A stretch of DNA of 64,000 bases. Origin: Octopus sinensis (lineage: Eukaryota). Shown in pieces: positions 39,400-42,269 of this stretch. Both the position numbers and the translations under genes were made by a program. Position 1 is the stretch's first letter. Each line of letters starts with the position of its first letter. The stretch is from contig NC_043019.1 of the NCBI RefSeq assembly GCF_006345805.1, forward strand, positions 10,291,360 to 10,355,359, read 5' to 3'. The notes below the pieces were generated by a model. That model saw only the letters and a list, made by a program, of their open reading frames with translations, ran no database searches and was not told the DNA's origin.

Positions 39400-40044
39400 A
39401 TGATGAAATTCCAGAGATCAGATGAAGAGGTGGAGTGCGGTGGAGAGAAAGAAGCTGATTTCTTCAATCAGAACGAAGAGCAAGCAAAAGTTGCAGGAGA
39501 CCAGAATTTACTGAGTAACGAAAAGAAGATTAAAGATGAGTCCAGGTCTATGGAGAATTTGGTAGAAGCAATCGAGAAGGAAGACACGAAATCCTCAGAC
39601 TATCAGCCGTATGAATTTGAACCTAGAACACGATCCAATCAACCACAAGAGAACCATGTTAAATATGAGAATGCTGTTTATGACCATCCCTTCGGAATGG
39701 AAGTCATCAACTTACAATGTGTGAAGTGTGGTGAATGTGGTTACATCACTATTGATCGGAAATGTTGTCTCTATTGCCAGAACTCAACTGTTGAATTGTG
39801 TCAGCAAGCGTCGAATGAATTTCCTCGTCCCTCGAACTCTAAACAAGAAGATGGAATCCCAGAGAAAACGACCGTCGTTCCGCCGAGGCTGGTCGAAGAA
39901 GGAAATGTGAAGAGAGAAGATGAGAGAGACGAAGAAGTGGAAGAACTGGTGGATTATTCGAAATTACATTGGATGAAGTTCTTGCTGAGAAGACACGAAA
40001 GAAGCTTATTGCAAATGAACAGGTTGCAGGAAGTTAAACATTGA
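39400..40044 (+). CDS. Intronless hypothetical acidic protein A (214 aa) with a Cys cluster and C-terminal HWxK motif
   Basis: Non-repetitive 645-nt ORF, ATG with an in-frame stop just upstream, E/K/D-rich. AATAAA at 40295-40300 followed by GU-rich sequence. C-terminus homologous to ORF 41423-41914. Confidence 0.7.
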   Translation: MMKFQRSDEEVECGGEKEADFFNQNEEQAKVAGDQNLLSNEKKIKDESRSMENLVEAIEKEDTKSSDYQPYEFEPRTRSNQPQENHVKYENAVYDHPFGMEVINLQCVKCGECGYITIDRKCCLYCQNSTVELCQQASNEFPRPSNSKQEDGIPEKTTVVPPRLVEEGNVKREDERDEEVEELVDYSKLHWMKFLLRRHERSLLQMNRLQEVKH

Positions 40045-41422
40045 AAAGTGCCGGTGATATAACTGGTATGAAACTTTTGTAGGTACTGCAAAGAGTTTTG
40101 CTCATCTAAGAGATGTGATAGGACATGTAAGAGACGATCCCGTCTCAACATTGAGATTTTGATGATTTCTTCTTTTTTTTCCTTTTTTAAATATCATCAT
40201 ACAAATTCTTTGGTTTTTCAAATTGGAAATATATTTTGGGGGTCGGGAAGGTGGGGAGTTCTTAAGGGGTTTTATTTCCATAATGGATATTTTGAATAAA
40301 ACTCAACATTTGTGTCAATATTAATAATAATAAAAATATTTTCTAACAATTCGGTTTTGTTGTCATTTCTTTCGGGTTTTGCGCTTAAATAAAGAAAAAA
40401 AAATAACCACAAAAAAACAGAAAATTACAAATAATACAAACATAAATGCATGCGAGTGCGCGCACCCACACAAACACATATCTGATGGTGTAGATACGTG
40501 GAATTCTTTTTCTTTTAACTGTTTTAGTCATTCCAGTGAGGCCATGCTGGAACACCGCCTTACATACATACATACATACATACTTACATACATACATACA
40601 GACATATACATACATACATACATACATACATACATACACGACGCAAATTTTCTAGCCCTTCATTCATTTAGGTGCGTCAGGTCAAATGTTTAACCTCGGC
40701 GTTAAAAGTCATTAATTTGGCGATGAACGACCGCTGACTTCTGAGGGAAAAGGTCAGTGGCAGGTGAAAGCAGTCATCCGTATAGGCACCCCTGAAGCTT
40801 TCGGCCGAATTAACGACAGCTACACATTCAACTTGGCAGAGGCACACAAAGGACCAACTAAAATCATAAAATGTTTTTGCTGAATGTGAAGATTAATCAG
40901 TGATAAGGTGACGGCATTTTATGCTTTCAGCTATTACTACCAACAAGTGGTTTCCTCGAGTTAGCGCTACCACGTGAATTAACTTAGCAGAGAAGCTTAT
41001 GTGACTAGATATATTTTAAAGGGCTCCCGGCTGAGGAAAATACACAGGCGTAGACACACTGACTCTGTTTATTGAAAATCAGTAATTTGTCCTGCGCCAA
41101 CAGACTGGGCATAAATGTCTCTCTACACACGTCTACAAAATCTTATCCAACGTACAATTCTCATCGCATAATAAGTCCATGTATCTATAGGGAGATTTAC
41201 TTTATTTTACACTGAAGGTAAATTAGCGATACAAACGTGATTCGAACCTGCTGTGGTTGGTAACGCATGTGTAGTTCTTTGATGTAAATCTGCTGTTTTA
41301 TTGAAGACTTGTCAAATTCGTACGTTGTGCCGCGTTGCTGGGAATCGTTCCTTAATCGTAAATTCTCTCTGATACGACGATTGTTATTACCACAACAACT
41401 CGATCTCCACAACTTTAAAGAG

Positions 41423-41914
41423 ATGGAGAAAGAATACGTTATTCACCCGAAGAACAAATACTCTCTTTCTGATAACGGAAAAAATATGAAGAAATTTTCG
41501 GTATCGGACCAACAGACGAAGTATGGCGAAGAGAAAGAGGAAGAACTCCTGACTCGGAACGAAAAGGTACAAGAAGATTCTGGAAAAAGGGATTTAGCCG
41601 GTGATGAGAATGCTAATGTTGGCTCCAGTCTCATGGCAGATGTAGATGTCTGTCCCCTGTATGAGCAAGACTCCACTTCCGAACGATCGCAACAAACTTG
41701 GAATTATTCTTCCAGCAAAGACAATATACACAACGATGGAACGGCATTGAAATTCTCCGCTATATCAACCAGGAACGATGGGAAGCGAGAATATGTTGAA
41801 GATGACGAAATCGAAAACCTCATTTATTTAAACACACACTGGAAAAAGTTGGTGTTCCAAAGATATTTAAATTTGAACACAAGTTCAAACGATTTCAAAA
41901 AGCGTAAACATTAA
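41423..41914 (+). CDS. Intronless hypothetical acidic protein B (163 aa), paralog of A
   Basis: First ATG at 41423 (the track's 41309 start is TTG). MEKEYVIHPKN...KREYVEDDEIENLIYLNTHWKKLVFQRY...KRKH*. AATAAA at 42054-42059. Confidence 0.68.
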   Translation: MEKEYVIHPKNKYSLSDNGKNMKKFSVSDQQTKYGEEKEEELLTRNEKVQEDSGKRDLAGDENANVGSSLMADVDVCPLYEQDSTSERSQQTWNYSSSKDNIHNDGTALKFSAISTRNDGKREYVEDDEIENLIYLNTHWKKLVFQRYLNLNTSSNDFKKRKH

Positions 41915-42269
41915 AACAGGATGGGAAACGTTGTGAGAGAAGATAAGATACAGACGTACATTTGGTGAATCCTCAACGTCTTGCTGAGAAATACTACATC
42001 AGCTGTGAATATTTCAAAGATTGTTAAACATTAGCATTTTGTGTAACCTAAGTAATAAAATATCTTTTTTTTTAAATCATGAGTCTTGTTGTGATTTGCC
42101 TTGGCAGTATTTCAGTTGACTTGAAATAAAAACAAACTAGAAAAATAAAATCCAAAAGCAATAAAAAATACATAAATACATAAAAAATGGATAAACTATG
42201 TAACGTGCATAGACACACATATACATATGTATACACACTTTCATATGTGTTTGTGTGTGTGTGTGTGAA

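What the first reader, a model, noticed from the sequence alone, without database searches (positions are those of the whole stretch)
39400..42060. Tandem pair of intronless orphan genes sharing an unrecognised C-terminal HWxK domain
Seen: two non-repetitive + strand ORFs (214 and 163 aa) about 1.4 kb apart, each with an ATG, CpG-containing upstream sequence and a downstream AATAAA. Their C-termini align with a single gap: KREDERDEEVEELVDYSKLHWMKFLLRRHERSLLQMNRLQEVKH* versus KREYVEDDEIENLI-YLNTHWKKLVFQRYLNLNTSSNDFKKRKH*. That gives 15 identities in about 44 positions and exactly 25 residues from the conserved H to the stop in both. Several conserved residues use different synonymous codons (R aga/cga, D gac/gat, L ctg/ctc, H cat/cac), as expected under purifying selection on protein. 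The N-terminal parts are acidic and low in complexity, with echoes such as LLSNEK/LLTRNEK and AGDQN/AGDEN. Only A has a Cys cluster (CVKCGEC...CCLYC). I recognise no family. Inference: a lineage-restricted tandem family of disordered proteins with a small helical C-terminal module.
Basis: partly seen in the sequence, partly recalled or inferred. Interest (0 to 1): 0.75.

Follow-up and report, generated by a model that had tools for sequence, protein, structure and literature searches.

The report
Tail-less CIR1 retrogene pair in octopus
The two "orphan" octopus genes are real, but they are fast-evolving, intron-free, shortened copies of the conserved nuclear protein CIR1 (a splicing and Notch-pathway corepressor), so this is an ordinary gene-family offshoot and not a new protein domain.

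Summary
Two + strand ORFs, A (39400-40044, 214 aa) and B (41423-41914, 163 aa), are paralogues (BLASTP E=3e-10).

The "orphan / unrecognised HWxK domain" reading does not hold. A profile of the family reaches oyster CIR1 and human CIR1 (PDB 6zym chain 9, E=1.6e-14). hhalign against a CIR1 alignment gives 99.6% probability and E=1.2e-24, colinear over A residues 6-198 and CIR1 residues 19-210.

- The "HWxK" module is the diverged CIR1 helix motif DPEVxFLKSLTxKQKKKLLKKL.
- A's Cys cluster is the CIR1 zinc knuckle. B has lost most of it through a roughly 65-residue deletion.
- Both ORFs stop where CIR1's Lys/Arg/Ser-rich tail begins.
- In cuttlefish, the CIR1 region colinear with these ORFs is split into at least 7 exons over about 22 kb. 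A retrocopy origin followed by tandem duplication is therefore most likely.

Intact copies exist in O. vulgaris (four A, one B) and in a third octopod. dN/dS is about 0.5-0.65, all indels are in frame, and ORF retention under neutrality is improbable, so the genes are probably functional but fast-evolving. I obtained no transcript evidence. Function is inferred only: a CIR1-like adaptor lacking the tail. Interest is modest.

The parts
39400..40044 (+). Gene A: 214-aa single-exon ORF, a tail-less CIR1 paralogue
   Evidence: ORF. The exact protein exists as an NCBI model on Octopus sinensis CM016881.1. Colinear with CIR1 residues 19-210 and with human CIR1 residues 23-238.
39403..39528 (+). A residues 2-43: remnant of the CIR1 N-terminal helix (distal part of Cir_N and the following coiled region). 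The first ~21 CIR1 residues are missing.
   Evidence: Alignments. AF2 helix 9-64 at pLDDT about 60-75. No Pfam Cir_N hit.
39679..39777 (+). A residues 94-126: CIR1 core 'DQPFGIEVRNVRCIKCxxWGHVNTDxxCPL' with the zinc knuckle. In O. sinensis and O. vulgaris the His is Tyr and a new Cys lies two residues before it.
   Evidence: BLASTP A vs oyster CIR1 gives E=2e-15, 37% identity over 67 aa. P0008 keeps the CCHC pattern and gives a sub-threshold zf-CCHC_6 hit. Alignment.
39910..40041 (+).
   Evidence: hhalign and PDB profile alignments. AF2 helix 186-213 at pLDDT about 90.
40295..40334 (+). AATAAA hexamers downstream of A (40295, 40329). The second aligns with an AATAAA in the third species.
   Evidence: read by eye. 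No transcript data.
41423..41914 (+). Gene B: 163-aa single-exon ORF, a second tail-less CIR1 paralogue with an internal deletion
   Evidence: ORF. Orthologues P0002 (O. vulgaris, 97%) and P0003 (third octopod, 68% over aligned positions; 65% by BLASTP). BLASTP to oyster CIR1 gives 2e-8 and 1e-6.
41423..41644 (+). B residues 1-74: degenerate Cir_N region plus helix, aligned to oyster CIR1 residues 9-74
   Evidence: Pfam Cir_N not detected.
41648..41683 (+). B residues 76-87 'VCPLYEQDSTSE': the last Cys of the former zinc knuckle. About 65 residues, including the other three ligands, are deleted just upstream.
   Evidence: Alignments.
41783..41911 (+). B residues 121-163: the C-terminal 'HWxK' module, the same CIR1-derived helix motif, ending in KKRKH
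42054..42059 (+). AATAAA 140 nt after the B stop, conserved in the third species (L004 ~849-857)
38600..40561 (.). About 2-kb unit (A plus ~0.8 kb upstream and ~0.5 kb downstream) that is present four times in O. vulgaris

Best explanation
A and B are two diverged, single-exon, truncated paralogues of CIR1 (corepressor interacting with RBPJ 1, also called CBF1-interacting corepressor, a component of human catalytic spliceosome structures).

Shown here:
- Both ORFs are colinear with the N-terminal ~210-240 residues of CIR1.
- A keeps the helix after Cir_N, the 'DQPFG...zinc knuckle' core and the acidic-basic helix motif.
- B keeps a degenerate Cir_N, has lost about 65 residues including most of the knuckle, and keeps the same C-terminal helix.
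- Both ORFs end at the '...KKH' that precedes CIR1's Lys/Arg/Ser-rich tail, so they lack that tail.

Inferred origin: a processed CIR1 mRNA was retro-inserted in an octopod ancestor. The copy lost the tail, then duplicated in tandem at the DNA level into the A and B types. A-type copies are still being duplicated (1 copy in this assembly, 4 in O. vulgaris).

Inferred status: both are protein-coding and under weak purifying selection (omega about 0.5-0.65).

Inferred function (sub-claim probability about 0.35): the proteins are nuclear. Through the retained CIR1 helices, and the knuckle in A, they bind a subset of CIR1's partners (spliceosomal C-complex neighbours and/or RBPJ-SAP30-HDAC). They do so without the RS-like tail, and so act as lineage-specific modulators or competitors of CIR1.
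For: Homology:
- Exhaustive profile search: besides the family itself, the hit to a named family is a Cir_N protein (P0011, E=2.7e-4; Cir_N 1e-12; its relatives are named 'corepressor interacting with RBPJ 1'). Two algal-looking repeat proteins, P0009 and P0010, also scored and were set aside.
- BLASTP A-CIR1 2e-15, B-CIR1 2e-8 and 1e-6, P0008-CIR1 7e-19.
- hhalign family vs CIR1 alignment: 99.6%, E=1.2e-24, 187 columns.
- Family profile vs PDB: human CIR1 6zym_9/8i0w, E=1.6e-14, residues 23-238.
- Full multiple alignment.

Intronless vs intron-rich parent:
- The cuttlefish CIR gene spans 35.8 kb. Residues 1-209 lie in 7 separated exons.
- A and B are uninterrupted, and the O. vulgaris models are single-exon CDS.
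- LINE endonuclease/RT elements are present in the window.

Coding constraint:
- Intact ORFs in three species.
- dN/dS for A is 0.56 (p=0.002). For B it is 0.52-0.64 (p=0.01-0.05).
- All 7 indels are in frame. The simulated chance of no stop under neutral substitution is 0.0015 for A and 0.05 for B.

Origin within cephalopods: cephalopod CIR1s (P0058, P0059) are the best-scoring CIR1s for both A types and for the third-species B, but not for O. sinensis B, whose best hits are oyster CIR1s.
Against: - No transcript or protein evidence was obtainable. The third-species contigs look genomic, and no RNA-derived contig carrying A or B turned up.
- Between O. sinensis and O. vulgaris the CDS are no more conserved than parts of the intergenic DNA: 1.6-3% against 1.7-4%. 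Those short-range dN/dS values (0.5-1.0) cannot exclude neutrality.
- Two of four O. vulgaris A copies, including the syntenic one, carry a 1-bp frameshift in the last 12 codons.
- Pfam does not recognise Cir_N in A or B.
- Retrocopy hallmarks (poly-A tract, target-site duplications) are not demonstrable. The octopus parental CIR1 locus itself was not examined.
- The margin by which cephalopod CIR1 scores best is small.
- The functional model rests on analogy only.
Confidence: 0.8

Rival explanations
1. Processed pseudogenes. A and B are dead retrocopies of CIR1 whose ORFs persist by chance or only recently, and they make no functional product.
For: - No expression evidence.
- O. sinensis-O. 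vulgaris divergence in the CDS is similar to nearby non-coding DNA.
- dN/dS reaches 0.75-1.0 in some close pairs.
- Late frameshift in two O. vulgaris copies.
- The Pfam domain is eroded.
- B is not in the protein collection for O. sinensis.
Against: - ORFs are intact in three species and in both ancient paralogues (A/B dS saturated).
- dN/dS is significantly below 1 at the longer distance.
- All 7 indels are in frame. ORF survival probability is about 2e-5 for A and about 2e-3 for B under neutral simulation.
- Start and stop positions are conserved, and the stop follows the same 'KH' in A and B.
Confidence: 0.12
2. One reading: a true orphan or de novo, lineage-restricted family with a novel small C-terminal HWxK domain unrelated to any known protein.
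For: - No Pfam hit.
- A word-seeded search of 5.8 billion proteins finds only octopus relatives.
- Foldseek finds nothing.
Against: - Full-length colinear homology to CIR1 by four independent comparisons.
- The HWxK helix itself aligns to the CIR1 motif DPEVxFLKSLTxKQKKKLLKKL.
Confidence: 0.02
3. DNA-level duplicates of CIR1 that later lost all introns, or terminal exons of a larger, still unrecognised multi-exon gene, with no retrocopy involved.
For: - No poly-A relic or target-site duplication could be shown.
- The A units are demonstrably duplicated at the DNA level in O. vulgaris.
- 5' UTR introns cannot be excluded without RNA data.
Against: - Simultaneous absence of at least 5-6 parental intron positions inside one ORF is the classic signature of retroposition.
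- ATG and stop codons are conserved across species.
- Public O. vulgaris models are single-exon.
Confidence: 0.05
4. Fragment of a transposable-element protein.
For: - LINEs and SINE-like repeats surround the locus.
- The zinc knuckle is a motif also found in retroelement Gag proteins. P0008 gives weak zf-CCHC hits.
Against: - Only two copies in 64 kb and five in the O. vulgaris cluster, all at one syntenic locus.
- No TE domain.
- The knuckle and its flanks match CIR1 specifically.
Confidence: 0.01

Closest known systems
CIR1 / CIR (corepressor interacting with RBPJ 1; CBF1-interacting corepressor), Pfam Cir_N PF10197; human protein modelled in PDB 6zym chain 9 and 8i0w
   Same: Colinear sequence homology over the N-terminal ~210-240 residues. 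This covers the helix following Cir_N, the 'DQPFGIEVRNVRCIKCxxWGHVNTDxxCPL' zinc-knuckle core (A only), the 'EDG..LK' patch and the 'DPEVxFLKSLTxKQKKKLLKKL' helix.
   Different: - 163-214 aa instead of about 300-700 aa.
- No Lys/Arg/Ser-rich C-terminal half.
- A lacks the first ~21 residues of Cir_N.
- B lacks about 65 residues including three knuckle ligands.
- Pfam Cir_N is not detectable.
- Only about 25-30% identity.
- Single exon, against at least 7 exons for the same region in cuttlefish.
- Tandem and copy-number variable.
- dN/dS about 0.55, whereas CIR1's N-terminal half is about 70% identical between oyster and cuttlefish.
CWC25 (pre-mRNA splicing factor CWC25 homologue)
   Same: CWC25 shares the Cir_N-type N-terminal segment with CIR1: phmmer of CIR1 hits CWC25 chains 5yzg_X and 6zym_t over residues 9-79. 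It is another extended, mostly disordered spliceosomal C-complex factor.
   Different: The A/B family profile hits CIR1 and not CWC25 in the PDB search. The knuckle and the C-terminal motif are CIR1-specific.
Lineage-specific processed retrogenes of housekeeping nuclear factors (general class; from established knowledge, not tested here)
   Same: Intronless copy of an intron-rich parent, truncation, rapid evolution, tandem amplification and copy-number differences between sister species.
   Different: Retroposition hallmarks and the expression pattern, which is often germline for such genes, could not be checked here.

Membership tests
CIR1 / Cir_N family (PF10197) | Pfam Cir_N domain above the gathering score at the N-terminus | tested here: not met
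   hmmscan of A and B gives no family even at E<=10. The control, oyster CIR1 P0011, scores 48.5 bits against a cut-off of 22.6. B still aligns to CIR1 residues 9-74 by BLASTP (2e-8). A starts at about CIR1 residue 22.
CIR1 / Cir_N family (PF10197) | Significant colinear homology to the conserved N-terminal half of bona fide CIR1 proteins | tested here: met
   hhalign 99.6%, E=1.2e-24, A 6-198 vs CIR1 19-210. Family profile vs human CIR1, E=1.6e-14. BLASTP 2e-15 and 2e-8.
CIR1 / Cir_N family (PF10197) | Zinc knuckle C-x2-C-x4-H-x6-C preceded by DQPFGIEVRN | tested here: inconclusive
   A in the third species keeps CCHC (CMKCGEYGHMNIDRKC). O. sinensis and O. vulgaris A have H->Y with a new Cys two residues earlier (CVKCGECGYITIDRKC). 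B has the region deleted and keeps only the last Cys. Zinc binding was not testable.
CIR1 / Cir_N family (PF10197) | Conserved acidic-basic motif DPEVxFLKSLTxKQKKKLLKKL | tested here: met
It is diverged. AF2 predicts a confident helix there.
CIR1 / Cir_N family (PF10197) | Long Lys/Arg/Ser-rich (RS-like) C-terminal half | tested here: not met
   Both ORFs stop directly after '...KH', the point where the CIR1 tail begins.
CIR1 / Cir_N family (PF10197) | Binding to RBPJ/SAP30/HDAC2 or incorporation into the catalytic spliceosome | not testable with these tools
   Only human CIR1's presence in spliceosome entries 6zym and 8i0w was seen. There are no data for A or B.
Processed retrogene | Absence of the parental introns across a contiguous coding region | tested here: met
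   Cuttlefish CIR residues 1-209 lie in 7 exons over about 22 kb. A and B are uninterrupted ORFs spanning those junctions. The octopus parental gene itself was not examined.
Processed retrogene | Poly-A relic and target-site duplications at the insertion | tested here: inconclusive
   A-rich tracts lie about 350 nt (A) and about 230 nt (B) after the stops, but the genome is AT-rich and the event is old. No direct repeats were identified.
Processed retrogene | Transcription of the copy | not testable with these tools
   No RNA-seq access. All contigs carrying the family look genomic.

The most novel reading that the evidence does not exclude
Octopods have evolved and keep amplifying a family of tail-less CIR1 retrogenes. 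These act as natural dominant-negative or tissue-specific variants of a catalytic-spliceosome / Notch-corepressor adaptor, for example in germline or nervous tissue. The A type maintains zinc binding through a His-to-Cys ligand swap. The B type works through the two helices alone.
Probability: 0.2. Interest if true: 0.5.

Novelty: new variant of a known kind. Interest (0 to 1): 0.3.

Why it matters
This removes a false "orphan gene / new domain" lead. Both genes carry no informative name in public data: the A and B models in O. vulgaris are called 'hypothetical predicted protein', the O. sinensis A model has no name shown here, and B is not in the protein collection for O. sinensis. They can now be annotated as CIR1-like, tail-less paralogues.

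If they are expressed, they form a natural deletion series of CIR1: with and without the zinc knuckle, and always without the RS-like tail. That series could help dissect which parts of CIR1 mediate its spliceosomal and RBPJ-corepressor roles. It would also add one case to the catalogue of lineage-specific retrogene families in cephalopods. The finding does not open a long-standing question.

Tried and rejected
- Pfam on A, B, P0003 and P0008: no usable hit.
- Word-seeded searches of 5.8 billion proteins with A and B: octopus relatives only. Homology to CIR1 appeared only with the exhaustive profile search.
- P0009 and P0010 from that search (E 1.5e-7 and 9.5e-5) are repeat proteins ('ARCYFDRPSAPEQET' units). 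They match a short stretch of the profile several times, with no Cir_N or other consistent Pfam hit on the one scanned, P0009 (P0010 was not scanned). I treated them as repeat-inflated chance matches.
- AF2 on the 8-sequence family alignment: pLDDT 38, useless. With 43 sequences only two helices become confident. Foldseek against PDB then gives nothing.
- Flank-versus-CDS identity with a permissive global aligner was uninformative, because shuffled controls scored as high. I discarded it in favour of dN/dS and ORF-retention simulation.
- Literature searches for the SRA runs and for the CIR1 domain function or structure paper found nothing directly usable. Statements on CIR1's RBPJ/SAP30/HDAC2 and SR-protein contacts are therefore from general knowledge.
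- Rfam and ARAGORN on 36-46 kb: nothing.
- DNA-level similarity between the A and B loci: none detectable, so their duplication is old.
- Whether O. sinensis hides more A copies in the N gap at 36644-36743 could not be resolved.
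Full report
**Source and observation**

The window is Octopus sinensis chromosome record CM016881.1 (GCA_006345805.1), around 10.29-10.36 Mb. The exact 214-aa protein of ORF A is on that record, and the fetched locus L001 starts at window position 29400.

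BLASTP of A against B gives E=3e-10 over the C-terminal 93 residues and E=7e-5 over the N-termini. tblastn and blastn find no other copy in the 64 kb window and no DNA-level similarity between the two loci. AATAAA hexamers follow both ORFs, and the upstream DNA is not CpG-depleted.

**What it is**

Pfam sees nothing in A or B. Word-seeded searches of 5.8 billion proteins return only octopus relatives:
- four A-type proteins in O. vulgaris;
- one B-type protein in O. vulgaris (97% identical);
- a 169-aa B orthologue (P0003, 65% by BLASTP, 68% over aligned positions) from a Logan assembly of an unidentified octopod.

The exhaustive HMM search of 1.84 billion representatives, using a profile of A, B and their orthologues, added two hits. 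One is a 207-aa A-type protein from the same unidentified species (P0008, E=7e-24). The other is a 461-aa protein (P0011), at E=2.7e-4.

P0011 carries Pfam Cir_N (E=1e-12). Its close relatives are named 'corepressor interacting with RBPJ 1' in oysters and across metazoans.

Direct tests confirm the link:

| Comparison | Result |
|---|---|
| A vs P0011, BLASTP | E=2e-15, 37% identity over the 'DQPFGIEVRNVRCIKC..GH' core |
| B vs P0011, BLASTP | E=2e-8 over CIR1 residues 9-74; E=1e-6 over the segment after the knuckle |
| P0008 vs P0011, BLASTP | E=7e-19 |
| 8-member family vs 11 CIR1 N-terminal halves, hhalign | 99.6% probability, E=1.2e-24, 187 aligned columns, A 6-198 to CIR1 19-210 |
| Family profile vs all PDB sequences | Human CIR1 (6zym chain 9, also 8i0w), E=1.6e-14, residues 23-238 |

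**Anatomy (alignment)**

- A's M-M-K-F aligns with CIR1 N-I-K-K-V-W, so A lacks the first ~21 residues of Cir_N.
- B's Met1 aligns with CIR1 Met9 and keeps a degenerate 'FHPxSKxNIKKVW' (IHPKNK...NMKKFS).
A LLSNEK aligns with B LAGDEN and CIR1 LLGDEK.
- A's Cys cluster is the CIR1 zinc knuckle, C-x2-C-x4-H-x6-C.
- The third-species A keeps CCHC (CMKCGEYGHMNIDRKC).
- O. sinensis and O. vulgaris A read CVKCGECGYITIDRKC. The His has become Tyr and the Tyr two residues earlier has become Cys. This may be a ligand swap (inference).
- B has lost about 65 residues, from after 'GLSFMYDA' to before 'ICPL'. The breakpoints do not coincide with the cuttlefish exon borders, so it is a genomic deletion and not an inherited splice form.
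- The terminal 'KH' of A and B aligns with the '...KKKH' that opens CIR1's Lys/Arg/Ser-rich tail. Both ORFs therefore stop exactly where the tail would begin.

With a 43-sequence alignment, AlphaFold2 predicts only two confident elements in A: helix 9-64 (pLDDT about 60-75) and helix 186-213 (pLDDT about 90). The rest is disordered. The module is thus a single helix, not a globular domain. Foldseek finds nothing. This fits a CIR1-type extended adaptor.

**Origin**

The cuttlefish CIR gene (P0058) spans 35.8 kb. Its residues 1-209 are encoded by seven separated exons. A second cephalopod CIR1 (P0059) is known from a contiguous 1.9-kb contig that encodes the whole 560-aa protein without interruption and is probably a spliced transcript.

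A and B cover the same residues in one uninterrupted ORF each, and the O. vulgaris gene models are single-exon CDS. Loss of at least five to six parental introns at once is the signature of retroposition of a processed mRNA. LINE endonuclease/RT elements lie in the same window.

Cephalopod CIR1s score best among 120 CIR1s for both A types and for the third-species B, but only narrowly. O. sinensis B scores best against oyster CIR1s. The A/B split is old: dS is saturated and there is no DNA similarity.

A-type duplication is ongoing. O. vulgaris has four A copies, two on each strand, plus B within about 23 kb, built from a ~2-kb unit equal to window 38600-40561. This O. sinensis assembly shows one A copy, but a 100-N gap lies 2.7 kb upstream.

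**Coding or dead?**

Between O. sinensis and O. vulgaris the CDS differ by 1.6-3%. That is no less than some adjacent intergenic DNA. The dN/dS values at this distance (0.5-1.0) rest on a handful of changes, so this comparison is uninformative.

Against the third octopod:
- A shows dS 0.58, dN 0.32, omega 0.56 (Fisher p=0.002).
- B shows dS 0.27-0.31, omega 0.52-0.64 (p=0.01-0.05).

All seven indels are multiples of three. Simulations that apply the observed number and spectrum of substitutions at random leave the ORF open in only 0.15% of trials for A and 5% for B. Multiplied by about 0.012 and 0.037 for the in-frame indels, these give roughly 2e-5 for A and 2e-3 for B.

Start and stop positions are conserved. 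Both genes are therefore most likely functional but weakly constrained and fast-evolving.

Caveats:
- Two O. vulgaris A copies, including the syntenic one, carry a 1-bp insertion that rewrites the last 12 residues.
- The distance from the conserved His to the stop is 25, 26 or 29 residues in different members. The extreme C-terminus is not a fixed feature.
- A's higher dS than B's may mean that P0008 is not A's strict orthologue.
- I could obtain no transcript evidence. The third-species contigs carry microsatellites and run past the poly-A signals, so they look genomic.

**How it probably works**

CIR1 is present in human catalytic spliceosome structures (6zym, 8i0w), together with CWC25, whose N-terminus is related to Cir_N. 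From general knowledge, not from tools here:
- CIR1's N-terminal part contacts RBPJ/CBF1, SAP30 and HDAC2.
- Its RS-like tail contacts SR-type splicing factors.

A and B retain only N-terminal interaction elements and lack the tail. The most economical mechanism is a nuclear adaptor that occupies some CIR1 binding sites without delivering the tail. It would act as a modulator or competitor, or as a sub- or neo-functionalised tissue-specific variant. This step is inference, at perhaps 0.35 probability.

**Membership and novelty**

A and B are homologues of CIR1 but fail several defining features:
- the Pfam Cir_N threshold;
- the tail;
- the multi-exon structure;
- the knuckle, in B.

They are best filed as a derived, tail-less CIR1-like retrogene family, a new variant of a known kind. 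They are neither canonical CIR1 nor an orphan family. Public names are uninformative ('hypothetical predicted protein' for the O. vulgaris models), and B is not in the protein collection for O. sinensis.

**Verdict**

The tandem, intronless, lineage-restricted pair with a helical C-terminus holds. 'Orphan' and 'unrecognised domain' are refuted. Interest is modest at 0.3.

Noticed in passing
window 7866-8072 (+) and 14555-15037 (+): Exon-like ORF pieces of a short-chain dehydrogenase gene. The first contains 'KTLFITGASRGIGKYIAMKAARDGANVVIAAK' and hits Pfam adh_short at 2e-7. By eye it resembles HSDL2. The second piece has no Pfam hit. This is a neighbouring multi-exon gene upstream of the CIR1-like pair.
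   Followed up: partly
window 26320-29013 (+) and 30567-33438 (-): Two non-LTR retrotransposon copies with AP-endonuclease and reverse-transcriptase domains. The + copy has one long open frame that runs in-frame out of a microsatellite. The - copy is split into three ORFs and is degraded.
   Followed up: partly
window 36644-36743: A 100-N assembly gap lies 2.7 kb upstream of gene A. O. vulgaris has four A copies in the corresponding region, so the single A copy here may be an assembly collapse and not biology.
   Followed up: partly
window 42265-42400 and 43852-43987: A 136-bp element with a tRNA-like head ('ggctcagtggttagagcg...gttcgatacccgg') is present as an inverted pair at 89% identity, and looks like a SINE. 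ARAGORN and Rfam report nothing.
   Followed up: partly
window 23600-26300, 29000-30500, 38100-38900, 46100-47200: Very long imperfect TA/CA-type microsatellite arrays generate spurious ORFs of hundreds of codons (YIYI.../CMYV...). The GC fraction falls to 0.09 in 24-26 kb.
   Followed up: no
L002/L008 (O. vulgaris OX597836.1, 3.60-3.63 Mb): The CIR1-like cluster is laid out as A(-) 3602960, A(-) 3614235, A(+) 3617736, A(+) 3623281, B(+) 3625380. The outermost (-) copy at 3602960 and the innermost (+) copy at 3623281, the one syntenic with window A, share the same 1-bp frameshift near the 3' end. This suggests duplication or gene conversion after the frameshift. A PLAT-domain gene lies beyond the cluster.
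   Followed up: partly
window 39718-39744 (A residues 107-115): Zinc-knuckle ligand pattern: the third-species A has ...CGEYGH..., while O. sinensis and O. vulgaris have ...CGECGY.... The His is lost and a Cys is gained two residues upstream, which may be a compensatory ligand swap.
   Followed up: no
window 41190-41290 vs L004 40-90: A ~70-bp insertion or deletion upstream of B separates O. sinensis from the third octopod. The extra O. sinensis segment contains a 'gattcgaacctgctg' tRNA-T-loop-like string. It has no GT..AG ends, so it is not an intron.
   Followed up: no
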